This document shows positions 1 through 52,756 of a DNA stretch of 64,000 nt, in pieces. Below the pieces are notes generated by a model. It had not been told where the DNA came from. It did no database searches and was given only the letters and a program-made list of their open reading frames with translations. A program made the translations under genes and the position numbers. The stretch's first letter is position 1. Every line of letters starts with the position of its first letter. The stretch is from positions 1 to 64,000 of IMG/VR virus record IMGVR_UViG_3300025000_000053, one strand, 5' to 3'.

Positions 1-239
1 TTGAGTAATCCGCAGCCAAGTCTCTAATATATTAGAGAAAGGTTCAACGACTATCCTTTAGCTTTGAAATAAGCAACAGGAGTAGGGCTCAAGTGAGTGG
101 GTGAAAATCCCTTAAATCGAAATAGGAAGCTCCTTAATGAATAATTCATTAAGGATGAAGATATAGTCTAGTATCTTATCGAAAGATAAGGAAGTTCATA
201 AGAGAACTGTATTGTTTAACGAACAATATGAATATATCG
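1..239 (+). mobile_element. Group I intron 1 (3' part; 5' end outside window), no ORF in P6, inserted in an RNAP beta-prime gene
   Basis: Core elements AATCCGCAGC (Q), GTTCAACGACTAT (R/P7), AAGATATAGTC (S/P7'), ending AATATATCG at 239; near-identical to four other copies in the window. Confidence 0.92.
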
Positions 240-404
240 GATCAAGTATCATTAAAGGTATTATTTTCTCAAGAAGCTAATCTTGAGGCAGAAAGAATTA
301 TGAAATCAAAAGGTCATATTCTTAATATCTATGGACAAAATATGAGAAAGACAACAAATGAAGGTGCTCATACTTTATTTATGCTAACGAAGTTTAATAA
401 ATAA
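240..404 (+). CDS. Last exon of a multisubunit RNA polymerase beta-prime subunit (segment starting at the final Asp of the catalytic DxDGD), probably virion RNAP
   Basis: Not in ORF track; translates DQVSLKVLFSQEANLEAERIMKSKGHILNIYGQNMRKTTNEGAHTLFMLTKFNK*, aligning by eye to RpoC [41 protein letters not shown]. Confidence 0.85.
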   Translation, partial: DQVSLKVLFSQEANLEAERIMKSKGHILNIYGQNMRKTTNEGAHTLFMLTKFNK

Positions 405-410
405 ATAATA

Positions 411-475
411 AAAATATATGTGATTTATTCACATATATTTTTTTCGTATTTTTAACATTAATAGATATATATTAT
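411..475 (+). promoter_or_regulatory. Terminator hairpin + CGTA + early-type promoter TATATATTAT (466-475)
   Basis: AAAATATATGTGA/TCACATATATTTT hairpin, then CGTA at 445 and the core motif 21 nt later; same layout at four other sites. Confidence 0.7.
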
Positions 476-523
476 TTTAGTAATATGAATAAAATAATAT
501 AAATTATAAGGGGGGTTTTCATA

Positions 524-856
524 ATGAAAATAACATTTGATTATACCATGAAGGAAGCCAATTCTATTAACGGTTTAATAACAGAGGCAAATAATGTTGC
601 TAAACTGTTATCTGAAACAAAAGGCGATGTTATTGTTATACCGTTTGAAAACAGGCTTGCAACATTGAAAGTTGTCAAAGGTGAAAAAGCTGTGCTAGAT
701 ATTAATGAAGATTTCTTTATTGATTCTTTGTCGTATTTAACACATGTTTATAACCGAATTGTACCACTTGTTTTAGCTTATAAAAATCTTATACAAGATA
801 TATTCCCTGTTGCAAAAGATTATGTAAACAAATGGTTTCCAAAGAAAGATAAATAA
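524..856 (+). CDS. Hypothetical protein (early-type promoter)
   Basis: 110-aa ORF with G-rich RBS, promoter motif upstream and terminator downstream. Confidence 0.8.
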   Translation: MKITFDYTMKEANSINGLITEANNVAKLLSETKGDVIVIPFENRLATLKVVKGEKAVLDINEDFFIDSLSYLTHVYNRIVPLVLAYKNLIQDIFPVAKDYVNKWFPKKDK

Positions 857-887
857 ATTTTTATATATTTTTATTTAATTTTACCTA

Positions 888-923
888 AAAAAATAAAGGT
901 GTAATAATCCACCTTTATTTTTT
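888..923. terminator. Intrinsic terminator hairpin
   Basis: AAAAAATAAAGGTG / CACCTTTATTTTTT inverted repeat. Confidence 0.8.
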
Positions 924-938
924 GTGTGTTCCTTGCTT

Positions 939-950
939 AACACTATTATA
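939..950 (+). promoter_or_regulatory. Late-type promoter AACA-N6-TA
   Basis: AACACTATTATA; same motif precedes capsid, sheath, terminase and other genes. Confidence 0.6.
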
Positions 951-1460
951 CTAAATTTTTATTTTCATGAACCCGTTTCCTACTATAAAAAGAAATGGGG
1001 GTGATTAAAGAATTGATAATACAATTTATATAAATATAAAACATATTTATCATAGATATTGATAATATTTTTAACTCAAATAATTTATATCTTCTATCAG
1101 TAAAATAACATATAGAAGGGAGGGATGCCTATATACACATAACGATGTATATGGGATAACCTCTAATTATTTGCGAGTTTAAAAATATTATCTTTATATA
1201 ACTTTATTTAGAATTCGCCTACAAACTCCCCATAGACACTTGTGTATATAGGCAATCTATGATGGATGGGGACACTATCGGTTTAGAATATGATGAAGAA
1301 TAATATGCTACCTATTTGTTACAATGAATTTAGATAGTGTGAAAAAATACCTACTATTTTACAATTAAATATGTTCCGATATAAATAGTAGTAATGGTGA
1401 ATTTATTTTTATAAAATAAAAATAAAGCTCTGTGTAAATAATCCACAGAGCTTTATTTTT
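950..1460 (+). ncRNA. Candidate large structured non-coding RNA of unknown family
   Basis: No ORF >=60 aa; bounded by late promoter and terminator; nested stems 1061-1084/1166-1192, 1211-1219/1396-1404, 1272-1279/1333-1340, 1351-1359/1383-1391; perfect 14-bp pairing 1126-1139/1241-1254. Confidence 0.55.
1418..1460. terminator. Bidirectional intrinsic terminator
   Basis: AAAAATAAAGCTCTGTG / CACAGAGCTTTATTTTT. Confidence 0.85.
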
Positions 1461-1805
1461 TTATTTTTTTTCAATAACATCGGGTATAATTTCTGGTTTT
1501 AAATTTTTAATTTCTTTCTGTTCAGACTTAGTACTTTTATTACTTTGTATAGGAACATTTTGAATTACTACTGGTTTTGATTTAGGGATTTCTTCCTTTA
1601 TATCATTGTCTTTATCAAAATTACGAGCTGTTAATTTAATTTCAGTACCATCTTTAAGTACTTCAACAACATTAACACCTTTACTAATCATAGCAAAGAT
1701 AGTGGAAGTTTGTTCTGTATAAGGACTTAAGATTGGTCCATACACTCCACCCTTTGCCATAATAGGAGCTGTGCTAAGGATTTTAATATTTTTAGTTTTA
1801 ATCAT
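1461..1805 (-). CDS. Hypothetical protein
   Basis: 114-aa ORF with GGAGGG RBS. Confidence 0.8.
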   Translation of the reverse strand: MIKTKNIKILSTAPIMAKGGVYGPILSPYTEQTSTIFAMISKGVNVVEVLKDGTEIKLTARNFDKDNDIKEEIPKSKPVVIQNVPIQSNKSTKSEQKEIKNLKPEIIPDVIEKK

Positions 1806-1827
1806 TTGTTAAACCCTCCAATTTTAT

Positions 1828-2079
1828 TTAATAATTAGTATCCGGAATAAAATTTTCTTTAATATGCTTTAATTTTTCTTCCATATCCTGTTCTTCATCA
1901 AACTCAGGAATTCCGTCAACAAGTTTTTTAATTTCAGTACTTTCATCATCATCTATCAAGCCGGTATCATCCAAGATAGCATCACGAATATCATCATCGC
2001 CACTACTTTGGGCTACAGCTTCCATTAAAAACAGTTCTTGATTACTTTTACGAATATTTTTTTTAAGGTTAGATAACAA
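1828..2079 (-). CDS. Hypothetical acidic protein (start revised to TTG at 2079)
   Basis: GGGGGT RBS before TTG 2079; late motif at 2101-2112 (-); the longer ORF-track start overlaps the upstream gene. Confidence 0.65.
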   Translation of the reverse strand: MLSNLKKNIRKSNQELFLMEAVAQSSGDDDIRDAILDDTGLIDDDESTEIKKLVDGIPEFDEEQDMEEKLKHIKENFIPDTNY

Positions 2080-2122
2080 TATAATTACCCCCAATCTTTT
2101 TATTAAAATGTTTAAATGAAAA

Positions 2123-3313
2123 TTAGTTATTAGAAACAAATTTATTATAATAATATCGGAGAATAAATAATAACATAGGTATTTTAATATATGAATTAAA
2201 AGTATATTCCATATAATCATATTCTTCTAATTTTTCTAAATTTATATTATAAACTGAATCAATATGTTTATTAAAATAATCTACTAATAAATTTTCAATA
2301 ATAAAATCATCACTAAGTTTAACATCAGTCATTATACTATTTAAAACTTCTTCCTCAATATAATTATCACCACTATTAGTAAATGAAATAGAATTAACAT
2401 TATCCATATAATAAAGAAATATAGAATTATAATTTTGAATTATTGCATTGATATATTTAATACTTGTAGGTAAATTCTTTTTACCTCTTTCTAATAATCT
2501 ATAAATTGATTTCTCATATTCAATCACAAATGATAAACTATCATCTTCATTAACCAAACAAATTGTATTAAAATTATATTTTTCATTAAATAAGATATTA
2601 TTATTAATAAAATGATTTAAATATTTATCATAGAATTTATTACCAAATTCATTATTAAATATAAAGCAATTATATTTTTTATTGAAAAAAAATATTTTAT
2701 ACTTATCAGCTATATATCTATAAATTTCATTTAGTTTAAGTATTTTATAATAATCATCTTCTCGAATTAAACACTTTTCTTGTGTACCAATATTTCTTAA
2801 TACACAATTATATATTTCATTAATTTGATTTTCTAAATCCGTAACTAATTCTCCATAAGCTGATTTTAAAGTAAAAGAAATTTTATAATAATTATTACTC
2901 TTTATAGTATCATATTTAACTTCTGTTACCATAAATAAATAATTTTTATCTAAATATGAAATAGTAAAAAAATCATTTGGTAAAGGTTTAAGTGTATTAG
3001 GAAGAATAATAAGTTCACTATCAAAATTAGTTGTTAAACCCTCTTCTTCTTCACTTAATTCCAACATAATAGATTCTAAACCATATACAGGAAAGTCGTT
3101 TATCTTTTTAAACTTTAGTGGAGAATTTTCCCCTAATAAATCTTCAATATTTTCAAATCCACTATCAGTAATACTATTAATATTATCAATATTATAATAT
3201 GTAACAAATGTAGGATTTTTATCTAAAAATCTAGAATATTGAGAATTCATTCTTTCTTCATACTTAAAAATATTTTCATTAATAAAAGTTTTATCATCTA
3301 TTAAATATCCCAA
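2123..3313 (-). CDS. Probable virion structural protein
   Basis: 396-aa ORF, GAGGAG RBS, late motif at 3346-3357 (-). Confidence 0.55.
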   Translation of the reverse strand: MGYLIDDKTFINENIFKYEERMNSQYSRFLDKNPTFVTYYNIDNINSITDSGFENIEDLLGENSPLKFKKINDFPVYGLESIMLELSEEEEGLTTNFDSELIILPNTLKPLPNDFFTISYLDKNYLFMVTEVKYDTIKSNNYYKISFTLKSAYGELVTDLENQINEIYNCVLRNIGTQEKCLIREDDYYKILKLNEIYRYIADKYKIFFFNKKYNCFIFNNEFGNKFYDKYLNHFINNNILFNEKYNFNTICLVNEDDSLSFVIEYEKSIYRLLERGKKNLPTSIKYINAIIQNYNSIFLYYMDNVNSISFTNSGDNYIEEEVLNSIMTDVKLSDDFIIENLLVDYFNKHIDSVYNINLEKLEEYDYMEYTFNSYIKIPMLLFILRYYYNKFVSNN

Positions 3314-3493
3314 GATTTACTCAACTCCTCTCATATATTTTAAATTAATATAATGTTAAAAAATATAAAGAAAATGATTTTTTCGTATTTTTATTATATT
3401 TATTTATATATTATTTAAATATATTTAATAAAATAATCTTACTAATAAGGGTAAATAAAAATACTTATTAGATAGAAAGGATGAAAAAAATTA

Positions 3494-3910
3494 ATGGAAA
3501 CTTTAAATGATGTTTTATTACAGAATAGATGTGATTATTATAATGTATGCCTGGAACATGATTGTCCTTGTGCATTAGATAGTAAGGAATTCGATCCCGT
3601 ATTATATAATAAATTACAAGAAGATTATTATAATGATTTAAAATCTCTTGGTTTTATTAATAGTATTGATAGTAGTATTATAGATGAAGATTATTGTGAT
3701 GATGAAAATGATGATAGAGAAGAAGATAATTATATTGATTTTTATATAAGTAATAATGAAATAAAGGTAGGTGATTCTGTAGGATTTTATCCATATGATA
3801 GTTATGATATGATAGAAGGTAAAGTAATAGGAATAGTTGATAAAATTTTATTTATTGTTTGTTATAATGGGAGATTATATAAGGTTGATGAACTCGATAT
3901 TCTTAAATAA
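3494..3910 (+). CDS. Hypothetical protein with acidic linker and short beta-rich C-terminus
   Basis: 138-aa ORF, early cassette at 3384-3414. Confidence 0.75.
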   Translation: METLNDVLLQNRCDYYNVCLEHDCPCALDSKEFDPVLYNKLQEDYYNDLKSLGFINSIDSSIIDEDYCDDENDDREEDNYIDFYISNNEIKVGDSVGFYPYDSYDMIEGKVIGIVDKILFIVCYNGRLYKVDELDILK

Positions 3911-4002
3911 AAGAATGAGTATATTCTTTTATTTTTTTAGGAACATAGAAAAAAATAAATCAGTATAAAAATTTACTGATTTATTTTTAATAAATATAAA
4001 AT

Positions 4003-4266: not shown

Positions 4267-4283
4267 AAATAAATCACTCCAAA

Positions 4284-14067: not shown

Positions 14068-15936
14068 CTATATACGAAGTATATTACTATAGTATTCATC
14101 TTCAGTTGTTTTAATAGTTGCAATACCCAAACTATCTAATACCCCATGGAACGTAGATAAGTTATTATTAATAATAGTATTATAATCAATAAACGGTATA
14201 ATCCAATTTGGTATTTTAGGTACATTTCTAGGTAAACCTATAACTTTAACTCCTTTCTCTTTTATTTTCTTATCACTATTATTATATATATTTTCAATAA
14301 TTCTTTCATATATTTCAGGTTCAGATTGTTTTATTCTTTCAATAGAATCTTCATCCATATTAACTTTAATGATGTCAATATGTTCAGGTAATTCTATTGC
14401 ATTATCAGGATAGGTATAATTCCATGCTATTACAGCTCGAACACCCATTTCTCTTAATGGATCTTTGTATGCTCCTAATTCTTTTACTAATTTAGGAATT
14501 AAGAAATCTTTTTGTCCTGATTCTAATGATACTCTAATCATATTTTCTAATTTTTCTAATTCTTTTAAAATATTTGAAATATTAATTTCTTCCGTTGATA
14601 ATAATTGTTCTTTAATAAGATTTTTAAAGAATTTTTCTGTTGCTTCTTTAGTTGATGATTTAACAAAATCTAAACCCTTAATATCAACTTTTTCAGGATA
14701 TATCTCATCACCTTCTCTTAATCTAACACTACTTATATACCTTTTCTTTTTTTGTGTTAGAATAATTCTAGAGAATAAAAATTCATTTTTCATATTTATT
14801 TTATGTCTATATCTTTTAGGTATATTGGCATCTTTTGTATACTTCTTTAAAACGTTAGTAATCATATTAGTTATTATATAAGCTAATATATTAATAGATA
14901 TAAATTTTAATTCAGTTTTATCCCTATTTATTAACTTATCATTAACATTAATAATATCATGTCTAATAAATTTAACCCATTTATCAATAGTCATTATTGT
15001 AGAGTCTGTATCTGAACCAACTACAGTTTTTCTTTCATCATATTTCAATCGTTTTATTCTATTATATGGAGAAAAATTAAAGAAAACAAACTCTTTATAT
15101 AATTTCCATAGTAATTCTAAATCATCTTTTACATTTTTAGGTATTTCATTGGGATTTTTAAATGTATCAATACTTTCTATAATATAAGATAACATATTTC
15201 TTATTTTTCTTAATTTTGAAAATTTAAGTAAGTTATTCTTATAATAAATTCTATTAATATCTTTTTGACTTAAAGTTGATAAATAATTTAAAATAAAATA
15301 ATTGTATTCTTCTTTATAGTTAAAGAATTTTTTCTTTAAATATTTCATTAATTGTTTTAAACTAATATTTTCTAAAAAGTTATCATTAAAATTTCTTTTT
15401 TCTTTAATAACATTAGATAAGAAAAACATACATTCTTCTAAATTATTAAATGGAGCGTTATTTTCTAAAAAAGTTTCAAAACCCATCTCAGCTGTACTAA
15501 TTAAAGATTGGCCGGAACTTGTGATCGCACTTGCAATATATAGATTATAAAAATTTGATGTAGAGGTTCCACTTGCTCCATAAAACGAATTTGCTGCCGT
15601 TTTCTCATTTCCTTGTAATCTATCAAAAGTACCATATTCATAATCATCTTTTTTATACTTTTTTAATTGATTTTTATATTCTTTCCTTAAAGACATAAAG
15701 TTTTCTAACATAACAGCCGCTGGATTTAATGACTCATCCTGATTTTTAAAAAATACACCAAAACCAGAAACTATAGGTTTAGTTTTTTTAACCCAATCAT
15801 AAACTGATATTAAATCAACATTAATAGATTTATGAATATAGTTATTATGAAGAATAGCTTTAGGATTGATTATATTTTTATCTATTATTTTATCTAAAAC
15901 TTTCGATATTTGTTTATCTGTTAATTCAGGATACAT
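14068..15936 (-). CDS. polB: Family B DNA polymerase, C-terminal subunit (motifs B and C); true start may be ATA 16005 or ATT 16011
   Basis: KTAANSFYG, GSDTDS, KKKRY, KGLDFVKS; lacks exonuclease and motif A. Confidence 0.88.
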   Translation of the reverse strand: MYPELTDKQISKVLDKIIDKNIINPKAILHNNYIHKSINVDLISVYDWVKKTKPIVSGFGVFFKNQDESLNPAAVMLENFMSLRKEYKNQLKKYKKDDYEYGTFDRLQGNEKTAANSFYGASGTSTSNFYNLYIASAITSSGQSLISTAEMGFETFLENNAPFNNLEECMFFLSNVIKEKRNFNDNFLENISLKQLMKYLKKKFFNYKEEYNYFILNYLSTLSQKDINRIYYKNNLLKFSKLRKIRNMLSYIIESIDTFKNPNEIPKNVKDDLELLWKLYKEFVFFNFSPYNRIKRLKYDERKTVVGSDTDSTIMTIDKWVKFIRHDIINVNDKLINRDKTELKFISINILAYIITNMITNVLKKYTKDANIPKRYRHKINMKNEFLFSRIILTQKKKRYISSVRLREGDEIYPEKVDIKGLDFVKSSTKEATEKFFKNLIKEQLLSTEEINISNILKELEKLENMIRVSLESGQKDFLIPKLVKELGAYKDPLREMGVRAVIAWNYTYPDNAIELPEHIDIIKVNMDEDSIERIKQSEPEIYERIIENIYNNSDKKIKEKGVKVIGLPRNVPKIPNWIIPFIDYNTIINNNLSTFHGVLDSLGIATIKTTEDEYYSNILRI

Positions 15937-16720: not shown

Positions 16721-17520
16721 TTGGAAAATAACATAAAAGAAATTATTGATTTATTAAGTAAAAGGGTATTTATTATTTCTGATATTATGGAAAGTAGGGA
16801 AACATTCAATGAGAATCTTGAAAACATTTATGACTATTTAAAACAAGGTTTCGAAATTAAAGAATTAAGAACTTGTCCAACCTATTTTAGATTTAAAGAA
16901 ACAACTGAAATTCATGCTTTACAATTAAGACATTTCCTTACCAATTTAATGTTTTGGGAACCATTGATGAGACTTGATGTTTCAGATAAATTAGATGAAA
17001 CTTATATAATTGATTGTACTAAAATGTCAACTAAGTTAATTAAGAATTATATAGATAATAAAATTGTTATACCATATAAAAGGATAGTTAATAATAAGAA
17101 AATGAATAAAGTTATTCATGATATGATTTATAATTTATCAAGAATATCAACAGATTTCAATATTATACTTGGTATGAGTATTAATATTGAAACCTTTATT
17201 GATGTTGCTAAAAGAAATCCAAGATTTAATGAAATTATTAGAACACAGTTGGATGAAAATATGCAACCAACTGAGATTGAAGAATATCTAGATAAATTAA
17301 TGCATGAACAAATAGAGATACTAAAAAATGATGAAAAAGATAATTTATTAAAACCAATACTTAAAGCAGGTGCAGGTATAAAAAGTAAACAATTAGCAGA
17401 GTTCTCAATTTCAGGCGGGTTAAAACCGAATCTCAGTGGTACTACAATACCTATCCCAATTAATACTAATTATGTAGTCGGTGGACTAAGAAATATATCT
17501 AATTATTATATAGATTCCCT
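16721..17520 (+). CDS. RNAP beta-prime C-terminal subunit (probably non-virion), exon 1; join(16721..17520,18695..19901), 668 aa
   Basis: GGLKPNLSG..PINTNYVVGGL..YYIDSL joins GGRKSL..NSGHFAR, the bridge-helix region; early motif at 16658. Confidence 0.88.
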
Positions 17521-18694
17521 AAATTACATTGGGGCTTAGTATAGTAATATACTTCGAACAACTTCTTTAATTGTCGGGGAAGCTCTAAGAGCCTAAAACT
17601 ACCAAGCTATAATAGTGATATTATGGTGGCTTAATCTAATCAATTAAGATACGGTAACAAGGTTTTAGGATTGAGTAATCCGCAGCTAAGATTCTTTACC
17701 TTAATAAAAAAATTAGAATAAAAAATATTGGGTTGAAATTGGAGGTGAAGTAATGAATGATAAATATTATGCTCGAAAAATGTTAATAATAATTAGACTT
17801 AAACCTACAATTTATAGAACTATTTATATTAATAATAATCCTACTAGGTATGAAGTTAGTAATTACGGTGATATTAGAAATAGTAAAACTAATTTGATTA
17901 TGAGACCTACTACTGATAATAAAGGATATATGAGGATTTGTTTAACTATTAATGGTAAAAAGATTACAAAAAAAATTCATAGATTAGTAGCAGAATGTTT
18001 TATTCATAAAAAATATAGTTTTCAAAATCAAGTTAATCATAAAAATAGGATTAGAAATGATAATTATGTATGTAATTTAGAATGGGTTACAGCTAAACAA
18101 AATCAGGAACATTCATATTTAGTTGGAGGACCAAGAAAAGTTAAAAAAGGTGAAAAGATGTTTAACGCTAAACACTATGAAATAGATATAATAAAAGTAT
18201 GTGAACTTTTAGAAAGAAAATTTAAATCAAAAGTAATTAATGAAATAACTGGTGTAAATAAACATGTTATAAATAAAATAAAAGAAGGTAAACTCTGGAA
18301 ACATATTTCAAAAGACTTTAATATACCTAGTCCTCGACAAAAAGAAATATATAGCTATAAATTAAAAGAAAGAATAAAAGAATTACTAATATTAAAACAT
18401 ACTTCAACCCAAATAATTAATATTTTAGATTTAGAATATAGTCAACCATATTATTCTTTAATCTTCAATATTAAGAATAAAATGAAAAAAGGTAAAGAAT
18501 AAAGTTCAACGACTATCCTTTAGCTTTGAAATAAGCATTAGGAGTAGGGCTCAAGTGAGTGGGTGAAAATCCCTTAAATCGAAATAGGAAGCATCTTTAA
18601 TAATAAAGATGATGATATAGTCTGGTATCCTAAGGAAAGCTTAGGGAAGTTCATAGGAGAACTGTATAGACTAACAATCTATATGAACTTTACG
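17521..18694 (+). mobile_element. Group I intron 2 (1174 nt) with HNH endonuclease ORF in P6
   Basis: P1 CCCU|AA..UUGGGG with U.G pair; conserved core; terminal G 18694; splicing restores CT|A Leu codon and frame. Confidence 0.93.
17753..18502 (+). CDS. Intron-encoded NUMOD4-HNH homing endonuclease (I-HmuI-like)
   Basis: YEVSNYG, IHRLVAECFI, VNHKN..N...NLEWVT; GGAGGTG RBS. Confidence 0.92.
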   Translation: MNDKYYARKMLIIIRLKPTIYRTIYINNNPTRYEVSNYGDIRNSKTNLIMRPTTDNKGYMRICLTINGKKITKKIHRLVAECFIHKKYSFQNQVNHKNRIRNDNYVCNLEWVTAKQNQEHSYLVGGPRKVKKGEKMFNAKHYEIDIIKVCELLERKFKSKVINEITGVNKHVINKIKEGKLWKHISKDFNIPSPRQKEIYSYKLKERIKELLILKHTSTQIINILDLEYSQPYYSLIFNIKNKMKKGKE

Positions 18695-19901
18695 AGGTGG
18701 AAGAAAATCTTTAATTATGAGTAAACTTGAGATGGGGAATTCTGGACATTTCGCAAGAATGGTCATGTTACTTGTTTCAAGTATTAATTTATCAAAAACT
18801 GTTGATTCATGTAATAGTGTACATCCAATAAAAATTGAACTATCTTCTAAAGAACATTTGATAAGAATGAGAGGTAGATATTACAGGACTATGTATTCTA
18901 GGAATTATCAATTGTTACGAGGAGATGAATATAATTTAATTAATGAAACTATTTTTGTTAAATCGCCTGCTACATGTGCATGTAAAGATGGTATATGTAA
19001 AATGTGTTATGGTGATTTATCTTATATAAATAAAGATATTACTATAGGTGCATTTGCTGGTACAAAAATTACTGAACCCGTATCACAAAATATTCTATCA
19101 TCTAAACACTTATTAACAACTAAATCACAAAAAATAGAATTCAATGAAGAATTCTATAAGTTTTTTAATATAAGTGGTAATGAAATCATTATTAATTCAA
19201 ATGAAGATAATGATGATTTAGATTTAGATGATTATACCTTACTTATAATTAAAAGTAATATTAAAACAATAGCAGATTATGATGATAATGATATGGAATT
19301 TAATGAATATGTAAATCTATTCCATGTATATAATAAGAAAACTGATGAAATGATAGAAATAAAAGAAACTGAAGAAAAAGATTTATATATATCTCCTGAA
19401 TTAAGAAAATTATTTAAGAAAAAAAGTAAGAAAGAAGTTTATGAGATTGATTTTAAAACTCTTGATGATGATAATAGAATATTCGTTATAGAAGTACTTA
19501 ATAATGAATTAACTAGACCTCTGTATGATATTATAAGGTTAATTGATAGAGTTGATTATAGAATCATACATTGGAACTGTGTAACAATTGATCAAATGTG
19601 TCAAAAGATGTTAGACTTAATAATAGAGTCTGAAATTAATTCAGATTCAGTTCATGGTGAATTAATACTAACACCATTACTAAGAGATAAAGACAATATA
19701 TTAGAAAGACCTAAATTCAACAGATATTTTAATAATGATGATGGATATCAAATATTAACAGTTAAAGCTGCTTTAGAGAAACATCCATCAGTATTAGTTG
19801 GCTTATCATTCCAAGCACTTGATAGACAATTAACAAACCCATTAACATTTAGAAAGAAAGAAAGTTCATTTATTGATCCTTTCTTTAAAGAAAGACCATA
19901 A
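18695..19901 (+). CDS. RNAP beta-prime C-terminal subunit, exon 2
   Basis: Zn site CACKDGICKMCYG; trigger-loop GAFAGTKITEPVSQNILSSKH; SVLVGLSFQ. Confidence 0.88.
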
Positions 19902-25280: not shown

Positions 25281-25431
25281 TAAAAATAAAGGAGAGAAAA
25301 TCTCCTTTATTTTTTTCGTATGTTTGTACTATTCATTTATATATTATATTAACATAATAGGATATAATACACACTAAAAATATATATTAAATATATCTTA
25401 TTAAAAAATAAAAAGAGGGGGAATTTTTTGT

Positions 25432-26184: not shown

Positions 26185-26347
26185 ATTTTTATTAATAAAA
26201 GAACTTTTAATTAAGTTCTTTTATTTTTTTAGTATTATTATATATTTTAAATATATATTATTTCATTGAATAAAATATTATTCCCACAATAAGGGGAAAT
26301 AAATATACTTATTGTATATATCTAAGATGATATATTTAGGAGGTGTA

Positions 26348-30181: not shown

Positions 30182-30309
30182 ATATATAAAATAATAAGTG
30201 ATGATTATATAATCATCACTTATTATTTTTTTAGTATTTTTAACATAATACTTTATATATTATAAATACATATATAGAAAAGATTTAGTTGTATTGGAGG
30301 TGAGATTAG

Positions 30310-39884: not shown

Positions 39885-40529
39885 GTGAAGAAACCATATA
39901 TTTATGATTTAGAAACTAAGAATTTATCTTTTATACAAACGGCTAAAGATTTACATATACTTGGTATTAAGAATAATGTATTTTTTTTAAAGCTATATGA
40001 TAAATCTTTAAAGAAAGTTGATCCCCATTCACCATTTTTAACAGATGATCAAATTATTAAAATTATTAATGAGTGTATGATTAACCCTTGGTATTATTTA
40101 AGAGAGGTTGCAAGGATTCCAGATCAGGGTGGTCGTGGTATAAGTTACCAGTTAAATAGAGGTAATTTAGCATCTACTTGGTGTTATTTAAATGGTATAG
40201 ACGACTATTTAGTATTACCAAGACAAATAGGTAAAACACAAAGTAAACTATGTATAATAAATTGGACATTTTTACTAGGTACTACTAATTCACAATTTAT
40301 GTTTTTGAGTTTAGATCAAACGGCCGCTAATGAAAATCTTGATAGGTTAAAAAAACAAAGAGATTTATTACCTCCTTATTTACAATTTAAACTAGTAACT
40401 TCAGATGAAGGTAAAATTATTAAAGAAATTGATAATGTTAAAACTCTAGTTAACCCAGTTAATAATAATAAAATTGTAACTAAACCTTCTGCTAAATCAA
40501 CTGAAGCTGCTGAGAAAATAGGTAGGGGT
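39885..40529 (+). CDS. terL: Terminase large subunit, exon 1; join(39885..40529,40916..42334), 687 aa
   Basis: Walker A LPRQIGKT; spliced GRG|NTQPIQMYDE gives Walker B; late motif 39840-39851. Confidence 0.88.
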
Positions 40530-40915
40530 AATTTTTTAGCCCCAACATATAGTAATATATGTTAAAAACTTCTTTAATTGTCGGGGAAGCTCTTAGAGCC
40601 TAAAACTACTAAATTAATATAGTAATATATTAATGGCTTGGACTAATCAACCAAGGTATAGTAATAAGGTTTTAGGATTGGGTGATCCGCAGCTAAGATT
40701 CCTGTATACAGGAATAAAGTTCAACGACTATCCCATGGATCTAAAATGATCATTAGGAGTAGGGCTCAAGTGAGTGGGTGAAAATCCCTTAAATCGAAAT
40801 AGGAGACTCCTTATTATTTAATAATAAGGATGAAGATATAGTCTAGTATCCTAAGGAAATCTTAGGGAAGTTCATAAGAGAACTGCATAGATTAACGACC
40901 TATGTGAATATATCG
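40530..40915 (+). mobile_element. Group I intron 3 (386 nt, no ORF)
   Basis: P1 GGGGU|..GCCCC; conserved core; terminal G 40915; frame restored. Confidence 0.93.
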
Positions 40916-42334
40916 AATACTCAACCAATTCAGATGTATGACGAAGTAGAATTTACGAGTTATATTAAAACTATTATTGAAGCTGCTGCCATGGCGTTTA
41001 AAACGGCTTCAGACAATGCTAAGAGAAATAATGCCCCTTATTCAAGGTCCCTACTCTCAACTCCTGGTGATCTCGATACTAAAGCTGGACAAGATGCCAT
41101 GGAAATAATTAGTAAGACATATAGATGGACTGAAAAATTTTATGATATGAAGATAGATGATGTTAAAGAAATTATAAAAAATAATTCAGAAAATAGGATA
41201 GTTTATATTGAATATGAGTATAAACAATTAGGAAAAGATGAAGAGTGGTTTAATGATTCATGTGCAATAATAGGTAATAACCCATTAAAAATTAAGAGAG
41301 AAATATTATTACAAAGAATGAGAGGTTCTTCTAATTCCCCATTTGAACCAGAAGATTTAGAACTTATTAGGGAAAAACAGGGTAAAATAATTGAAGAAAT
41401 CTTTATTAATAAATTATTTAGATTAGATGTTTATAAACCATTAGTAAGAGATAGGATATATTTTATATGTGTTGACGTTTCTAAAGGTTATGGTCAAGAT
41501 AATTCAGCCGTAGTAATATTAGACCCATATGAATTAAAACCTGTGGCAGAATTTGAATCGCCATATATAGGTGTAACTCAACTAAAGAATTTTTTATATA
41601 CACTTGTTAAAAAATATTTACCTAGAAGTATTTTATGTATTGAAAGAAATGAAAATGGTGAATCTATATTAGATGGATTGAGATATACTGATATAATGCA
41701 TAATTTATATTTTGATAAAGATAAAGATCCAATTGCCTCTCAATTAGATGATAGGATGGATAGTCAGGGATTTTTAAAACAAGAAGCTTTAAAACGTAAA
41801 TTATATGGAGTATGGACTGGAACTAAATCAAGACAAGTGATGTTTAGTTTGTTAGAAACACATATTGCAGAGTATAAAGATAATTTTATTTGTGCTAATA
41901 TTATTAATGATTTATTTAAATTAGTTATGAAAAAGAATGGTAAGATTGAAGCTGAGTCTGGATTCCATGATGATTCTATTATGGCTTATTTAATAGGATT
42001 GTATGTATATTATCATGGTAATAATCTACACTATTTTGGTTTTGTTAAGGGTCAGTTACCTGATGAGGAAGAAAGAAATAAAGGATTACAAACATATGAT
42101 GAGATAATGGAAGAAATGCCTGATGAAGAAAGACAATATTTCAATGAAAGTTTTGGTTCTAAATCTATAGATGATTATCAACAACATGTAATAGAAGAAC
42201 TTAAAAGAGTACAAAAAGAACAAAATAGTTTAATTAATATGAGTGGAATGATGAAACCCTCAACATATGCAGAAGAATATGATAATGATGAGAATGAAAT
42301 ATCATTAGATTTCTTTGATGAATTAAATAATTAA
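40916..42334 (+). CDS. terL: Terminase large subunit, exon 2
   Basis: MYDE, LSTP, nuclease CVDVSKG, IERN, HDDSIMA. Confidence 0.88.
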   Translation, partial: NTQPIQMYDEVEFTSYIKTIIEAAAMAFKTASDNAKRNNAPYSRSLLSTPGDLDTKAGQDAMEIISKTYRWTEKFYDMKIDDVKEIIKNNSENRIVYIEYEYKQLGKDEEWFNDSCAIIGNNPLKIKREILLQRMRGSSNSPFEPEDLELIREKQGKIIEEIFINKLFRLDVYKPLVRDRIYFICVDVSKGYGQDNSAVVILDPYELKPVAEFESPYIGVTQLKNFLYTLVKKYLPRSILCIERNENGESILDGLRYTDIMHNLYFDKDKDPIASQLDDRMDSQGFLKQEALKRKLYGVWTGTKSRQVMFSLLETHIAEYKDNFICANIINDLFKLVMKKNGKIEAESGFHDDSIMAYLIGLYVYYHGNNLHYFGFVKGQLPDEEERNKGLQTYDEIMEEMPDEERQYFNESFGSKSIDDYQQHVIEELKRVQKEQNSLINMSGMMKPSTYAEEYDNDENEISLDFFDELNN

Positions 42335-47731: not shown

Positions 47732-47736
47732 AAAAT

Positions 47737-47775
47737 ATTTATGTCTATACTGAATATTCAGTATAGACATAAATT
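47737..47775. terminator. Bidirectional terminator between tube and portal genes
   Basis: ATTTATGTCTATACTGAAT / ATTCAGTATAGACATAAAT inverted repeat. Confidence 0.75.
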
Positions 47776-48209
47776 TATTGTTCAGTTGTTGCTTCATCAG
47801 GATTCTCTAATTTAAATTTTTCATACTCTAATTTAGAATCCTCTATCACTTCATCAAACATTCTCCAAGGTAACATAGGTAACATTTCTCTTGATGCCTT
47901 ATTCATAACAATATCTTTAATTTTATTATCTTTATCAGTTGGAGTAAGATTTTCACCTGTTGTTGTTTTTAACATAAATGCTAAAACTTGATCGGCGTTT
48001 GAAATTAAATCACTCATATTCATAGTATTTAATGCTTTTGGTAAATTTAAACTATATATAAAAGTTTCAATTATTTCTTGGGGTATTTCAGTACTAGAAA
48101 ATTTCATTACTTTTTTATAAAATTCAGTTATATTAGGGTTAAAATCAAGTTGATCACTTACAACTCTACCAATAAATTTAGCATTAGCCATAACTAAAGT
48201 TTTGGCATA
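47775..48209 (-). CDS. Portal protein, exon 2
   Basis: YAKTLVMANAKFIGRV continues exon 1 in frame; resembles T4 gp20 ..DELKFAKFI.. helix. Confidence 0.72.
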   Translation of the reverse strand, partial: YAKTLVMANAKFIGRVVSDQLDFNPNITEFYKKVMKFSSTEIPQEIIETFIYSLNLPKALNTMNMSDLISNADQVLAFMLKTTTGENLTPTDKDNKIKDIVMNKASREMLPMLPWRMFDEVIEDSKLEYEKFKLENPDEATTEQ

Positions 48210-48595
48210 CGATATATTCACATAGGTCGTTAATCTATGCAGTTCTCTTATGAACTTCCTTATCTTTTGATAAGATACTAGACTATATCTTCATCCTTAT
48301 TATTTCTAATAAGGAGCTCTCCACTTCGATTTAAGGGATTCTCACCCACTCACTTGAGCCCTACTCCTGTTGATCATTTCAGATCCAATGGGATAGTCGT
48401 TGAACCTTTCTCATAGTAATACTATGAGACTTGGCTGCGGATCATCTAATCTTAAACATTATTACCTTACTCAGGTTAATTACTCCTGACCACTTATACC
48501 ATCGCTAATATAGTTTGGTAGTTTAAGATTTAAAGGCTTCCCCGACAATTAAAAGAGAATTGGTATTATAGATTGCTCTATAACCTGACTAATAA
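48210..48595 (-). mobile_element. Group I intron 4 (386 nt, no ORF)
   Basis: P1 CUGAU|UUAUUA GUCAG; conserved core on minus strand; terminal G at 48210. Confidence 0.92.
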
Positions 48596-50389
48596 ATCAG
48601 CTTCATTAATATAATTCATTATTACTGATGGAACTCCACTTCCATTAATATATGATGTTTTCAACATTTCCATTAAATCTGTATTTAATTGTATGTCCTG
48701 ACCTGCTAATACATCAAATTCTATACCCTTGTCTCCTGTTCTACCTACAGGAACAAAAATACCTTTAGCATGACCAATTTTAGATACCATCGTATTATAA
48801 TTCAGTAAATCCATAAAATTTATATCTCTTTCTTTCATAGTTCTAGCAACATCTTGTAGTTTATTAATAATATTTGCATCTATACCAGAATTTTTAATAT
48901 AATTAATTCTAGTATCATTAGATTTACTAATAATAGAAACCATTTTAAATATTAATAATGCCAGATAAAGCTTAGCATAAAATAATGATTTCATTAATAT
49001 GCTAGTACCTTCACCTTCTTCATTCTCATTGACAGTAAATTCAGTTATATAATCAACTGGTATAAATTGAAATTTTATTTTCTTCTTATACATTTCGTTA
49101 TAAGATAGGCAGTTCATTATTAATTCTTTAAATTTAATATTTTCTTCTAAATATTTCTTATTAAATGCTTTAACAATCTTTTCAGTTAATTTAGTTAAAA
49201 ACATATTTTCAAGTTCAGGTGTATTGAGATTCACTGTATTAACTCTTATTGTATTTATAAAAGGAGATTTAGTAATAGGTGATGATTCATGTATATAATA
49301 ATAACCTATAACATGTTCCATTATTTTAACTGGTATCATTTTTTTAGGACTAATTAATTTTATATAACAATCAGTTATATTATCAAAATTATTATTTTTA
49401 TCTTTTTCTGTAGATATAGTTCCATCATTAAAAAATGAAGATATTGAATTAGTTCTATTTTTAGTCTTAGCGTTATTTTTAATGGCTTCTTCAACATTTT
49501 TCTTAAATTTTTCATCAGTAATAAGTTCCGATACATCTACACCTTCTAAAATAGGTATATGTACAACATCATTTTCAATCTCAATGTCTTTAACTAAACT
49601 ATTTATTTCATTTTTTAAAGATGATGGATTACTTTTAATATTACCTTCATTTTTTAATTCAGTTATAAAATTGTCATCAATAGATTCAGTAATAGAAAAT
49701 GTTGTTAATTCTTTATTTTTCTTATCATAAAAATTTTCAAATAGTTTTGAATATGGTACAGTATATGCATAGTACTTACCATATTGTAGAGTTTTCGGTA
49801 TAATATGATTCTTTAATTTATTTGCTAATTTAAATTTCTTTTCTAAATTTTCAACTAAAGAAATATAACTTTGTTTATCCTCTTCACTACAGTTAGAACT
49901 TTTAAATTGTAAATTTCTAGATATAGATTGAGTTACATCATCAGCTGTTACAATAGCATCCCTAGTTGCATTAACAGCTTCCTCCAATTCAAATAAATGA
50001 CTACAGATTAAATCAAGGTCTTCATATAAAAGATTTTGATTTCTATATCTTTCATTAAAAAATTGAAATACAGCATTATCTTCTGCTGAAAATATATCTT
50101 CAATTTTTTTTATATTTGAAAATTGTTGATTGTCATAATCATTAAATAATTTTACTAAAAATGTTGAAACATCTTCACCAGTAAAATCAGTTAATTTTTT
50201 TATTTCATGATAAATAACATCATCAACTTGGTCTGATAATTTCTTTAATTCTTTTTCTCTTTTAGTATCATTAGAAAAAGTATTAAAAGATATTTTATCT
50301 ATTAAATCCGTAAATAAAGAATTCAATTTTACTAAGGGCTTTTCAATTTTTTTTACAACTTTTTTTTTATCATCTTTTTCATTACTCAC
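48596..50389 (-). CDS. Portal protein, exon 1; complement join gives 742 aa
   Basis: YGKYY, GTSIL, IEFDVLAG, YINGSGVPS motifs typical of T4 gp20-like portals. Confidence 0.72.
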
Positions 50390-50441
50390 TTATTCACACC
50401 CCTTATTATTTTTTAATAAAAATACTAGGATATATTATATC

Positions 50442-51083
50442 CTAGTATTTAATACATGTATACTTATGAAATAAGTTAAAATAATTAGTTTCTGATACTA
50501 TTAAACTTTCAAATAAATTACTATTAATAATATCTTTAAAGTAAATATTATTTTTTATACTTTTTAACATTAATGGTATTAGTTTAGAAGTTAATCGTAT
50601 TTTATAGTTATTCTCCGAAAAAGTAATAATATTCTTACTATTTAATTTTTTTATTATATCATCTGATAATATTATTTTATTAGTATTATTAAATTCATTT
50701 ATTTTATTTAGAGCTATTTTATATAGAATAACTAATTCTTTTGTTAATGAATTGATATTAGTTAAAGTTCCTATTTGAAAAACATTATCACCTTTTTCAT
50801 CTGTTAATAATATTTTGTCTTTTGAAATTGTTAAATATTTTATATGCTTTTTATTTTCTTGAATAACTTTAAATATATCCTTGGAATTTATACAAAATAT
50901 TTGTTTTTCTTCAATCATACTAAAGACTTGAACATCCATTTTACCAAAATGTTCTCCATAGCTCAAATGTTTATCATCGTTAATAAATAATATAGTACCA
51001 TCAGAAAATATAAAATATTCTGTAGATACCTTTTTAGCTAATTGGTTAAATTCATTTATTTTATTTACTTCAATTTTATACAT
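50442..51083 (-). CDS. Hypothetical protein
   Basis: 213-aa ORF with AAGGAG RBS downstream of polymerase. Confidence 0.75.
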   Translation of the reverse strand: MYKIEVNKINEFNQLAKKVSTEYFIFSDGTILFINDDKHLSYGEHFGKMDVQVFSMIEEKQIFCINSKDIFKVIQENKKHIKYLTISKDKILLTDEKGDNVFQIGTLTNINSLTKELVILYKIALNKINEFNNTNKIILSDDIIKKLNSKNIITFSENNYKIRLTSKLIPLMLKSIKNNIYFKDIINSNLFESLIVSETNYFNLFHKYTCIKY

Positions 51084-51094
51084 AAAATACTCCT

Positions 51095-51649
51095 TTATAC
51101 TACAAGTTTATTAATATAATAACTATTAACATCATTAATATCAATAATTAATTTACTCTTAGGTTTAATATTTAATTCCTCTTTTATAATAGAGTCTATT
51201 TCTTCTAACTTAGGAAGATTGAAAAATGCATGACCTAAACTATTCAAATCACCAGTTAACATATTATCTACAAATATTTTTCCTATATCTTCTTTCTTAC
51301 CCTTATCATCAATATCTTCAATATAATTAGGTAACTCTTTATTAGTTTCTATAATTAATTTACCTATCATAGAATTTGGTTCAATATTAAAACAAATAAT
51401 AATACTTGGATACATAGCAGAAAAATCCATATCAATAATATTATCAAATATAAATTTACTTTTTTTACCTAAAATTTCAATACCAACATGTGAGTTTAAT
51501 AATGGATTAGCAACTAGTGCTCCTGCAAATTTTTCATCTTCTTCTTCCTCATTATTTTTAACTGATTCTACACCATATTGAATATTATTGTTATTACCTA
51601 TTATTAAACCTTGTTTATAAAATTCTATATATGCACGATTTTTTAAGAA
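51095..51649 (-). CDS. polB: Family B DNA polymerase N-terminal subunit, exon 2 (motif A)
   Basis: FAGALV..P, DMDFSAMYPSII..NI. Confidence 0.88.
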   Translation of the reverse strand, partial: FLKNRAYIEFYKQGLIIGNNNNIQYGVESVKNNEEEEDEKFAGALVANPLLNSHVGIEILGKKSKFIFDNIIDMDFSAMYPSIIICFNIEPNSMIGKLIIETNKELPNYIEDIDDKGKKEDIGKIFVDNMLTGDLNSLGHAFFNLPKLEEIDSIIKEELNIKPKSKLIIDINDVNSYYINKLVV

Positions 51650-52756
51650 CGTATTATTCACATAGGTCGTTAGTCTATGCAGTTCTCTTATGAACTTCCT
51701 TATCTTTCAATAAGATACCAGACTATATCATTAACCTAATAATTTCTTATTGGGCTACTTCCTATTTCGATTTAAGGGATTTTCACCCACTCACTTGAGC
51801 CCTACTCCTAATGATCATTTCAGACCCAATGGGATAGTCGTTGAACCTTTTACCTTTTTTCGTATTCTGTCAATAACATTTCTGACGGCGTCATTATTTT
51901 TTAAAAATAATTTTTCTTTGATTTCTTTATTACTAAATCCCATTTTAATTAAAGAAATTATTTCTTCCTTTAATTCAATAGGATATTTTAGAGTAAAGTT
52001 AAAATCTTTTTTGGGTGGGAACTCATATTTTTTTGTTACATGTCTCCAAAATTTTTTATAATATAACTCTGTAATATATGACTGGCTTAAATCATATTTC
52101 AATGAAAGTTCTTTTGTAGTTTTCCCTTTCACTAAATCATTACAGATTGATATGATTAATTTTTTAGGATATTTATTAAAATGACTCCGTTCCCCAATAC
52201 AGGTTAAACCAATATCCCTAGCATGTATAGAATTATCTTTATGAGTTGACCATTCCAAATTATTAGAATAATTATTTTTTACATTACCGTCTTTATGATT
52301 AACTACTGGAAGATTATCGGGATTGGGAATAAACGCTTTTGCGACTAATCTGCTAATTTGTCTTCTATATTGAATACCATTTATATATAAATTAACATAT
52401 TCCCGTTTATTTTTAAATTCATTATTTTTTAATATTCTTCCAGAAACAGAATTTCTAACTCTACCAAGATCGCTAATTAAATATTTAGTTTTAATATTAT
52501 TAATTATAATCGGTCTAAAAAATTCAACATTAACTTTCATATTTTTCACCCTTTCTTTTTATTAGCGTCTAAAGAGTTTAAAAGGAATTTTGGCTGCGGA
52601 TTACTCAATCCTAAAACCTTATTACTATACCTTAGTTAATTAGACTAAGCCATTAATATATCACTATATTAACTTAGTAGTTTTAGGCTCTAAGAGCTTC
52701 CCCGACAATTAAAGAAGTTTTCTATATATGTTACCACATATAGGGTCTAATAATTA
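51650..52756 (-). mobile_element. Group I intron 5 (1107 nt) with HNH endonuclease ORF
   Basis: P1 GGUU|UAA..UUAGACC; conserved core; terminal G 51650; joins RQTV|FLKNR in frame. Confidence 0.93.
51815..52549 (-). CDS. Intron-encoded NUMOD4-HNH homing endonuclease
   Basis: YLISDLGRV, RLVAKAFIPNP, VNHKDG..NN..NLEW; paralogous to 17753-18502. Confidence 0.92.
   Translation of the reverse strand: MKNMKVNVEFFRPIIINNIKTKYLISDLGRVRNSVSGRILKNNEFKNKREYVNLYINGIQYRRQISRLVAKAFIPNPDNLPVVNHKDGNVKNNYSNNLEWSTHKDNSIHARDIGLTCIGERSHFNKYPKKLIISICNDLVKGKTTKELSLKYDLSQSYITELYYKKFWRHVTKKYEFPPKKDFNFTLKYPIELKEEIISLIKMGFSNKEIKEKLFLKNNDAVRNVIDRIRKKVKGSTTIPLGLK

What the first reader, a model, noticed from the sequence alone, without database searches (positions are those of the whole stretch)
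1..52756. One group I intron lineage has colonised five unrelated essential genes
Seen: five near-identical ribozyme cores (1-239, 17521-18694, 40530-40915, 48210-48595, 51650-52756). GGAGTAGGGCTCAAGTGAGTGGGTGAAAATCCCTTAAATCGAA is identical in four copies and differs by one base in the fifth. They sit in two RNAP beta-prime genes, terminase, portal and DNA polymerase. Flanking exons are unrelated, and each of the four visible P1 guides is tailored to its own exon. Established: homing copies an intron only into the cognate site, and AR9 and phiKZ relatives have introns in RNAP genes. Inference: repeated ectopic spread (reverse splicing or recombination with guide re-tailoring), placing transcription, replication and packaging under one splicing requirement.
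Basis: partly seen in the sequence, partly recalled or inferred. Interest (0 to 1): 0.8.

Follow-up and report, generated by a model that had tools for sequence, protein, structure and literature searches.

The report
Group I intron family in jumbo phage
Five related self-splicing group I introns really do interrupt five essential genes of an AR9-like jumbo phage, and the genome holds at least 16 of them, but intron-riddled essential genes are already well known in this phage group, so this is a good new example rather than a new kind of thing.

Summary
The 43-nt block occurs five times (0 expected). Each starts after a U that pairs with a G of its own guide, each ends in G, and removing them gives open frames colinear with uninterrupted homologues.

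Hosts:
- virion-type RNAP beta'-N, inside the DYDGD Mg site
- nvRNAP beta'-C
- TerL
- portal
- PolB

"Near-identical" is overstated: the cores are 58-88% identical.

The window is the start of a 250-kb IMG/VR contig from a distant AR9/PBS1 relative (25% GC). That genome carries at least 16 family copies, mostly in RNAP subunit genes and also in a RecA-like gene. Co-occurring relatives share some sites, lack others and have extra ones.

Same-site introns in relatives are on average the more similar. However, several different-site pairs are closer, up to 95.6% with bootstrap 100, or with identical 5' ends and guides. So spread between sites is well supported, most of it probably older than this genome. 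The mechanism of that spread is unresolved, and "one splicing requirement" is speculation.

Verdict: new member of a known kind.

The parts
1..239 (+). I1: 3' part (P5' to the final G) of a group I intron in the beta'-N gene of the virion-type RNAP. The full intron is 327 nt and is visible in L020 3919-4245.
   Evidence: 76.0 bits RF00028 on L020
240..404 (+). Last exon of beta'-N (DQVSLKV..., 54 codons plus stop). Together with the upstream exons it completes the Mg-binding motif DYDG|D.
   Evidence: (variant L003 reads GGDYDG|intron|DQV)
16721..17520 (+). Exon 1 of the nvRNAP beta'-C gene. The start codon is not verified. The exon ends in codon phase 2.
   Evidence: (AR9 nvRNAP 7S00_D residues 116-253)
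17521..18694 (+). I2: group I intron of 1174 nt with an ORF in the P6 loop.
   Evidence: The intronless allele in L026 is gap-free across the junction.
17753..18502 (+). I-HmuI-like HNH/NUMOD4 homing endonuclease ORF inside I2 (249 aa).
18695..19901 (+). Exon 2 of nvRNAP beta'-C. It starts (L)GGRKSL, at the bridge-helix region.
   Evidence: 7S00_D residues 257-629, E 4.8e-31
39885..40529 (+). TerL exon 1 (215 codons).
40530..40915 (+). I3: ORF-less group I intron of 386 nt, 7 codons upstream of the Walker B motif YDE.
   Evidence: (53.8 bits). The intronless allele in L041 is gap-free across the junction.
40916..42334 (+). TerL exon 2.
48596..50389 (-). Portal gene exon 1 (598 codons; start codon not verified).
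48210..48595 (-). I4: ORF-less group I intron of 386 nt.
   Evidence: (73.4 bits). The spliced product aligns without a gap across the junction to the uninterrupted AR9 portal g128.
47775..48209 (-). Portal gene exon 2.
52757..54007 (-). Family B DNA polymerase (N-terminal gene) exon 1.
51650..52756 (-). I5: group I intron of 1107 nt with an ORF in the P6 loop. The ORF's 3' end overlaps P7.
51815..52549 (-). I-HmuI-like HNH/NUMOD4 homing endonuclease ORF inside I5 (244 aa).
   Evidence: PDB 1U3E, E 2.6e-10
51095..51649 (-). DNA polymerase B (N-terminal gene) exon 2.
   Evidence: colinear with phrog_3011 and phrog_262 after exon 1

Best explanation
The five elements are paralogous members of one family of phage-type (IA2-like, with P7.1/P7.2) self-splicing group I introns. 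They sit in an AR9/PBS1-related jumbo phage.

How they work (established knowledge of group I introns): each is transcribed within its host gene. It folds, pairs its own internal guide with the last 3-5 exon bases (P1, with a U.G pair at the splice site), and is removed by the GTP-initiated two-step transesterification. This restores beta'-N, beta'-C, TerL, portal and PolB.

Two copies (I2, I5) carry I-HmuI-like HNH endonuclease genes in the P6 loop. These presumably drive DNA-level homing into intron-less alleles of co-infecting relatives.

The family reached its many sites, at least 16 in this genome, by rare moves between non-homologous sites. Most of these moves happened in ancestors of this phage clade, and ordinary homing keeps each site occupied. 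Exchange between copies continues, either as new moves or as gene conversion.

Shown here: homology, boundaries, guide-exon matching, covariation, exon colinearity, and site polymorphism.
Inferred: actual splicing, endonuclease activity, and the route of spread between sites.
For: - Motif and repeats.
- Rfam scores above threshold.
- Boundaries: every copy starts after a U, ends in G, and leaves an open frame when removed.
- Intron-less alleles are gap-free across the I2 and I3 junctions.
- Colinearity across the junctions with AR9 beta'-C, the AR9 portal and the PolB profiles.
- The variant strain shows GGDYDG|I1|DQV.
- Covariation: 28 of 66 predicted pairs keep pairing through double changes in 13 copies.
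- Guide matching: cognate P1 4.2 bp against 2.2 bp non-cognate.
- HNH ORFs match I-HmuI.
- At least 16 copies in the source genome, and many in relatives.
- Presence/absence and ORF+/ORF- polymorphism at the same sites.
- Different-site closeness: the I5 and RecA-gene introns are 95.6% identical with bootstrap 100.
- I1's first 57 nt, guide included, are identical to those of a beta-C intron in a relative, and both exons end ATGGT.
- Distant introns at or next to the same sites do not group with the window copies.
Against: - No RNA evidence of splicing could be obtained.
- I2 and I5 were not scored by Rfam as whole introns, because the ORF interrupts them.
- The intron tree from about 200 nt is poorly resolved; most deep nodes are below 70.
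- Same-site pairs are on average more similar than different-site pairs, so most of the signal is ordinary vertical or homing inheritance.
- The two HNH proteins are only 29% identical. The copies may therefore be old, and the core similarity may partly reflect functional constraint rather than recent common origin.
Confidence: 0.82

Rival explanations
1. No movement between sites happened in this lineage. Each of the five introns was acquired or inherited separately by ordinary homing from a donor with an intron at the same site. They look alike only because all belong to the widespread, strongly constrained phage IA2-type class.
For: - Same-site introns exist in related phages, and for TerL even in a distant phage; another distant phage has a family intron 3 nt from I1's site.
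- Same-site pairs are more similar on average: 81% against 72%.
- The 3' exon next to I5 is 97.5% identical to relative c263, against 89% upstream. This looks like a co-conversion tract from homing.
- The P9.1 motif and the 43-mer are conserved across hundreds of phage contigs.
Against: - The window copies are 75-88% identical to each other, but only 66-73% identical to the distant introns at or next to the same sites, and about 70-78% to introns of cultured phages.
- Several different-site pairs are closer than any same-site pair.
- Different-site pairs share identical 5' ends including the guide.
- At some point a family spread over at least 25 sites must have changed sites.
Confidence: 0.2
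2. Concerted evolution. The introns are old and were independently established. They are kept similar by gene conversion between copies within the genome, not by recent copying to new sites.
For: - Similarity is mosaic. I3 and I5 are 88% identical in the 5' half but 81% in the 3' half. I5 and the RecA-gene intron are nearly identical only from P7 onward and have different P1, P2 and P5 regions.
- The HNH ORFs are far more diverged (29% aa) than the cores.
Against: - Conversion should homogenise copies within a genome more than between genomes. Different-site identity is almost the same within phages as between them (72.5% against 71.0%).
- Abundant compensatory differences persist between copies of one genome.
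Confidence: 0.15
3. The elements are decayed intron relics or mere repeats, and the host genes are truly split or inactive.
For: Only the absence of RNA data.
Against: - Intact conserved cores, canonical U and G ends, and guide-exon pairing at every copy.
- Covariation that preserves the helices.
- Exons in phase with one another, in genes a phage cannot lose.
Confidence: 0.03

Closest known systems
[quoted passage not shown]
   Same: - Same phage group: TerL is 31-34% identical, and the portal and nvRNAP beta'-C are homologous.
- The same kinds of genes are interrupted: RNAP subunits, DNA polymerase and TerL.
- Intron content varies between relatives (bioRxiv 10.1101/2020.12.14.422802).
- AR9 g189 is annotated as joined from 6 pieces and contains four matches to this family's 3' half.
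   Different: - This is an uncultured phage with 25% GC and no close relative among the deposited phage records searched.
- The portal and a RecA-like gene are also hit here.
- The copies are closer to each other than to the AR9 or Staphylococcus phage introns, which match at about 70-78% over half the length.
[quoted passage not shown]
   Same: - Several similar IA2-type introns in one phage genome.
- Tandem introns separated by a very short exon: 23 nt in Twort (PMC10136302, PMC3073962).
- Sequence matches to Twort-like Staphylococcus phage introns.
   Different: - Far more copies and target genes here.
- The short exons in the same genome, outside the window, are 15 nt and apparently 9 nt.
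I-HmuI / I-BasI / I-TwoI type HNH nicking endonucleases of Bacillus and Staphylococcus phage introns
   Same: NUMOD4 plus HNH architecture. PDB 1U3E (I-HmuI) matches at E 2.6e-10. The ORF lies in a peripheral loop of a DNA polymerase intron.
   Different: Only about 30% identity. Nicking activity and target sites are untested.
Jug (jumbo gut) phages with about 18.5 group I introns per genome
   Same: Uncultured jumbo phages whose essential genes (terL, DNA polymerase, nrdD) are riddled with group I introns and HNH genes. Splicing there was confirmed from metatranscriptomes (PMC12880540).
   Different: A different phage clade, and mostly about 206-nt introns. That paper does not, in the passages read, address the relatedness of copies or movement between sites.
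Proposed ectopic transposition of group I introns (reverse splicing, or relaxed endonuclease specificity with illegitimate recombination)
   Same: Related introns at different sites whose 5' exon ends match the guide. This is the same kind of circumstantial evidence cited for rDNA introns (PMC3984707).
   Different: Here the sites are protein-coding genes of a phage. No reverse transcriptase step or RNA intermediate is evidenced.

Membership tests
Group I intron (Rfam RF00028) | Score at or above the family's gathering threshold against the covariance model | tested here: met
   I4 73.4 bits, I3 53.8 bits, full I1 76.0 bits; threshold 50. I2 and I5 are interrupted by ORFs and were not scored whole, but their halves match the family HMMs at 160-213 bits.
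Group I intron (Rfam RF00028) | 5' splice site after a U that forms a U.G pair with the internal guide (P1) | tested here: met
   All five: GGU/GCC, CCCU/GGGG, GGGGU/GCCCC, CUGAU/GUCAG, GGUU/GACC.
Group I intron (Rfam RF00028) | Terminal G at the 3' end of the intron | tested here: met
   G at 239, 18694, 40915, 48210 and 51650.
Group I intron (Rfam RF00028) | Conserved core helices maintained by compensatory changes | tested here: met
   P2, P3, P4, P5, P6, P9, P9.1 and P9.2 were predicted on 13 copies; 28 of 66 pairs show double changes. P7 and P8 are seen in the Rfam alignments but are not in the RNAalifold prediction.
Group I intron (Rfam RF00028) | Removal restores a continuous gene colinear with uninterrupted homologues | tested here: met
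   I2 and I3: gap-free intron-less alleles. I2: AR9 7S00_D residues 253/257. I4: AR9 portal. I5: PHROG colinearity. I1: DYDG|DQV.
Group I intron (Rfam RF00028) | Self-splicing with guanosine; ligated exons in RNA | not testable with these tools
This needs bench work.
Subgroup IA2-like phage introns | Extra P7.1/P7.2 hairpins between P7 and P3' | tested here: met
   The 43-nt block lies as an insertion between the P7 5' strand and the P3' strand in the Rfam alignment. It folds as two short hairpins in the consensus, columns 317-341. The subgroup assignment itself rests on my reading, not on a subgroup-specific model.
HNH homing endonuclease (I-HmuI-like) | NUMOD4 and HNH domains; similarity to a characterised enzyme | tested here: met
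   NUMOD4 is above its cut-off in both ORFs. HNH_3 scores 22.1 and 23.9, just under the cut-off of 24.8. phrog_59 matches at E 1e-37 to 4e-39. 1U3E matches at E 2.6e-10.
HNH homing endonuclease (I-HmuI-like) | Site-specific nicking or cleavage of the intron-less allele | not testable with these tools
Mobile (homing) intron | Presence/absence polymorphism at the same site among closely related genomes | tested here: met
   - I2 is absent in the variant L026, which instead has an intron 95 nt upstream.
- An extra PolB-C intron is present in L026.
- A second PolB intron is present in L022 and absent in the window.
- ORF+/ORF- forms occur at the portal, PolB and beta'-C sites.

The most novel reading that the evidence does not exclude
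This phage clade preserves a recent record of a group I intron moving between non-homologous protein-coding sites by selecting targets that match its unchanged guide. Different-site pairs share identical 5' ends and exon ends (ATGGT, GGGT, CCCT). This would be the strongest natural evidence so far for ectopic, possibly reverse-splicing-like, transposition of group I introns in a virus. The same genome also splices exons as short as 15 nt and 9 nt between tandem introns.
Probability: 0.25. Interest if true: 0.65.

Novelty: new member of a known kind. Interest (0 to 1): 0.38.

Why it matters
How group I introns reach new sites is an acknowledged open question; the review PMC3984707 states there is no direct evidence for the reverse-splicing route. 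A set of co-occurring, 80-90% identical jumbo phages offers a natural comparative dataset and a tractable experimental system for that question. It combines dozens of paralogous introns, site polymorphism, ORF gain and loss, and different-site copies that share guides.

For genome annotation, it shows that essential genes of such uncultured phages will be mis-called as fragments unless introns are modelled. The default Rfam scan missed all five copies here.

It does not change what is known about how such introns work.

Tried and rejected
- **Rfam gathering scan of the whole window:** 0 hits. This was a filter artefact; sensitive scans score the introns above threshold.
- **tRNA scan:** nothing.
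- **Megablast of 12 kb against phage records:** only intron pieces matched, so there is no close cultured relative.
- **First automated P1 search without a positional constraint:** it picked spurious helices. It was replaced by a constrained search, which still failed for five copies with tandem introns.
- **Maximum-likelihood tree of the 3' halves:** mostly unresolved, so I relied on pairwise identities and a few well-supported pairs.
- **Scan for the P9.1 motif to complete the copy count:** The count of at least 16 therefore rests on fetched segments only.
- **Genome-contig scan for the 23-mer:** 0 hits, so it gave no host clue.
- **PDB sequence searches with the beta'-N exons and the portal:** no hits.
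- **Papers not held:** the primary Twort and AR9 genome papers. Twort facts are cited from secondary sources.
- **Rejected idea:** that the five copies are a recent burst private to this genome. Same-site copies exist in relatives, and the HNH genes are only 29% identical.
Full report
**Observation**

None is expected by chance.

The repeat finder links the same five places over 140-390 nt. HMMs built from the copies find exactly five elements in the window.

- I1: ..-239 (+)
- I2: 17521-18694 (+)
- I3: 40530-40915 (+)
- I4: 48595-48210 (-)
- I5: 52756-51650 (-)

"Near-identical" is too strong. Pairwise identity is 58-88% over the 5' halves and 75-83% over the 3' halves.

**What they are**

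Rfam's default scan found nothing. With laxer filters, the group I intron model RF00028 (threshold 50) scores as follows:
- I4: 73.4 bits
- I3: 53.8 bits
- complete I1, read from an overlapping contig: 76.0 bits

I2 and I5 are the same ribozyme, split by an ORF inserted in the P6 loop.

The 43-nt block lies between the P7 strand and the P3' strand and forms two small hairpins. This is the P7.1/P7.2 extension typical of phage IA2-type introns.

An RNAalifold consensus of 13 ORF-less family members recovers P2, P3, P4, P5, P6, P9, P9.1 and P9.2. In 28 of 66 pairs, pairing is kept through changes on both sides. The RNAs are therefore under selection for structure.

**Splice boundaries and host genes**

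Removing the introns gives uninterrupted frames of 669, 688, 743 and 602 codons, including the stop. Evidence for each junction:
- **I2 and I3.** The junctions are confirmed by homologous intron-less alleles that align without a gap: L026 for I2 and L041 for I3.
- **I2 host.** It is the C-terminal beta' gene of the non-virion RNAP. Exon 1 ends at residue 253 of AR9 nvRNAP chain 7S00_D and exon 2 starts at residue 257.
- **I4 host.** It aligns across the junction, without a gap there, to the uninterrupted AR9 portal vertex protein g128.
- **I5 host.** It is a family B DNA polymerase whose two exons are colinear on the PHROG and Pfam profiles.
- **I3 host.** It splits TerL seven codons before the Walker B motif YDE.
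- **I1 host.** It sits inside the catalytic Mg motif of a beta' N-terminal gene. The upstream contig and a variant strain read GGDYDG | intron | DQVSLKV.

The I1 host gene has no sequence match to the solved AR9 or phiKZ non-virion enzymes. A second beta'-N gene elsewhere in the genome does match them. I1's host is therefore probably the virion RNAP, which is an inference.

**Guides**

For all five copies, the last 3-5 exon bases pair with a G-initiated guide placed just before P2:
- GGU/GCC
- CCCU/GGGG
- GGGGU/GCCCC
- CUGAU/GUCAG
- GGUU/GACC

Over the 22 family copies for which the constrained search returned a 5' splice site, the cognate P1 averages 4.2 bp. Non-cognate exon-guide combinations average 2.2 bp.

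**Endonucleases**

The ORFs in I2 and I5 have NUMOD4 and HNH domains. They match PHROG HNH families and the I-HmuI structure 1U3E.

They are only 29% identical to each other. Homologues in other family introns are 29-42% identical, so they are much more diverged than the ribozyme cores.

**Wider context**

- **Source contig.** The window is the first 64 kb of IMG/VR contig 3300025000_000053, which is 249,853 bp.
- **Contig end.** Its last ~22 kb is a 79-89% identical second copy of the window's first 21 kb, with a different intron content. This is most simply a second strain joined on by the assembler, which implies a genome of about 227 kb (inference).
- **Phage type.** The phage is a distant relative of AR9/PBS1, BpSp and the Staphylococcus jumbo phages, with TerL 31-34% identical. 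Its GC content is 25%.
- **Family size in the collection.** A 23-mer from the conserved block hits 49 loci in more than 15 viral contigs and none in bacterial genomes.
- **Family size in this genome.** In the segments fetched, the source genome has at least 16 family introns:
  - two in the virion-type beta'-N gene
  - one each in nvRNAP beta'-C, TerL, portal, PolB-N and the second beta'-N gene
  - five or six in beta genes
  - two in a RecA/UvsX-like gene
  - one in an unidentified gene

**History**

Related co-occurring phages, whose exons are about 83-89% identical, carry family introns at the same TerL, portal, PolB, beta'-N and beta'-C sites. There are also clear presence/absence differences:
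- The variant strain lacks I2. It has a divergent intron 95 nt upstream and an extra intron in the PolB C-terminal gene.
- One relative has three introns within about 150 nt around the I2 site.
- Another has a second PolB intron at the SLYPS-type motif, which the window lacks.

ORF-containing and ORF-less forms alternate at the same site.

Mean identity of the 3' halves by class:

| Comparison | Mean identity |
|---|---|
| Same site, different phage | 81% |
| Different site, same phage | 72.5% |
| Different site, different phage | 71% |

So there is a real site-specific signal from vertical descent or homing.

Several different-site pairs are nevertheless closer than any same-site pair:
- I5 and the first RecA-gene intron are 95.6% identical from P7 to the end, with bootstrap 100. 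I5's same-site partner in a relative is 83.6% identical.
- The first 57 nt of I1, covering the P1 loop, guide, P2 and P3, are identical to those of a beta-C intron in a relative. Both 5' exons end ATGGT. The same-site intron of the variant strain differs.
- Two other introns in different genes of this genome share GGGT and nearly identical 5' ends.

One has a family intron at the same TerL site, and another has one 3 nt from I1's site in DYDGD. These are only 73% and 66% identical to I3 and I1. The second groups with a different-site intron of another distant phage at bootstrap 96. The test therefore does not refute a shared lineage.

Deeper tree nodes are unresolved, and similarity is mosaic. 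Recombination between copies is therefore likely.

**Mechanism**

*Splicing.* The anatomy is that of ordinary self-splicing group I introns.

*Maintenance at a site.* I-HmuI-type homing is the established model. The 97.5% identity of the 79 nt downstream of I5 to a relative, against 89% upstream, looks like a co-conversion tract.

*Spread between sites.* The data show that it happened, but not how. Guide-sharing different-site pairs fit insertion at sites that match an unchanged guide, by reverse splicing or by selection after DNA-level insertion. Other sites have unique guides, which implies re-tailoring. A caveat applies: in a 25% GC genome, any workable P1 must use rare G/C-rich exon tetramers, so shared GGGT or CCCT ends are weak evidence.

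*Alternatives.* Gene conversion between copies is a partial alternative. It is weakened because within-genome and between-genome different-site identities are equal.

*Common control.* Nothing supports a common regulatory "splicing requirement".

**Comparison with what is known**

- AR9, PBS1 and the MarsHill-type phages are already described as having introns in RNAP subunit, DNA polymerase and TerL genes, with variable positions between relatives (bioRxiv 10.1101/2020.12.14.422802).
- AR9 g189 is annotated in six pieces and contains four matches to this family.
- Twort has several similar IA2 introns and a 23-nt exon between two of them (PMC10136302, PMC3073962).
- Jug phages average 18.5 group I introns per genome, in terL, polymerase and nrdD (PMC12880540).
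- Insertion at catalytic motifs is the textbook pattern (PMC12908238).
- Ectopic spread is hypothesised but unproven (PMC3984707).

This is therefore a new member of a known kind. It has some value as a comparative dataset for movement between sites.

**Limits**

- No RNA data were available.
- The copy count comes only from fetched segments.
- Start codons of the exons are not verified.
- Subgroup assignment is by anatomy, not by a subgroup-specific model.
- The primary Twort and AR9 genome papers were not available.

Noticed in passing
L020 3535-3918 (IMGVR_UViG_3300025010_000040, same genome, just upstream of window position 1): I1 is preceded by a second, unrelated and GC-richer group I-like intron, 'X' (RF00028 only 20.5 bits). 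By comparison with the X-less variant strain, only a 9-nt exon TATGATGGT (YDG of DYDGD) separates the two. By that homology the last base of X is A or U, not G. An X-like intron with a GIY-YIG ORF sits at the same codon of the other beta' gene in a relative, and it ends canonically in G.
   Followed up: partly
L016 ~20-745 minus strand (source contig ~85.0-85.7 kb); same arrangement in L033: A RecA/UvsX-like gene carries two family introns separated by a 15-nt exon, GGTGGGAATGCACCT. It encodes GGNAP of the GGNALKFYAS-type motif. This is shorter than the 23-nt Twort and 34-nt Coxiella exons cited in PMC10136302.
   Followed up: partly
window 439-475, 3378-3414, 25311-25347, 26225-26261, 30227-30263 (+): A repeated intergenic module occurs five times with 0 expected: a T-run, then MGTAT, 12-24 nt, then TATATATTAT. 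Each lies upstream of a + strand gene. It contains the TATATTAT core reported as the AR9-type early promoter.
   Followed up: partly
source contig 227,856-249,853 (L003, L026) against window 392-21181: The end of the contig is a 79-89% identical second copy of its start, with different intron content. It is probably a second strain joined on by the assembler around a ~227-kb genome, so contig length overstates genome size.
   Followed up: partly
window 14068-15936 (-) and 51095-54007 (-): The family B DNA polymerase is encoded as two separate genes about 35 kb apart. The N-terminal exonuclease/motif A part carries I5. The C-terminal part is intron-free here but interrupted in the variant strain at about window 14673.
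   Followed up: partly
window 51815-51860 (-): The last ~14 codons and the stop of the I5 endonuclease ORF overlap the J6/7-P7 core of the ribozyme. The I2 ORF stops just before that core. Such overlap is known from the T4 td intron with I-TevI.
   Followed up: no
alignment A3: I1, L001, L003, L004, L008, L022 against I2-I5, L006, L027, L033, L034: The family comes in a long form with a ~60-nt P5 extension and a short form without it. Both forms occur within one genome, and the two forms can differ between relatives at the same site (PolB: long in the window, short in L022).
   Followed up: no
L047 5440-5791: A GC-richer distant relative has a family intron 3 nt upstream of I1's site (GDYD|GDQV). 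Across relatives, three different intron insertion points therefore fall within the 15 nt that encode the RNAP Mg-binding motif.
   Followed up: partly
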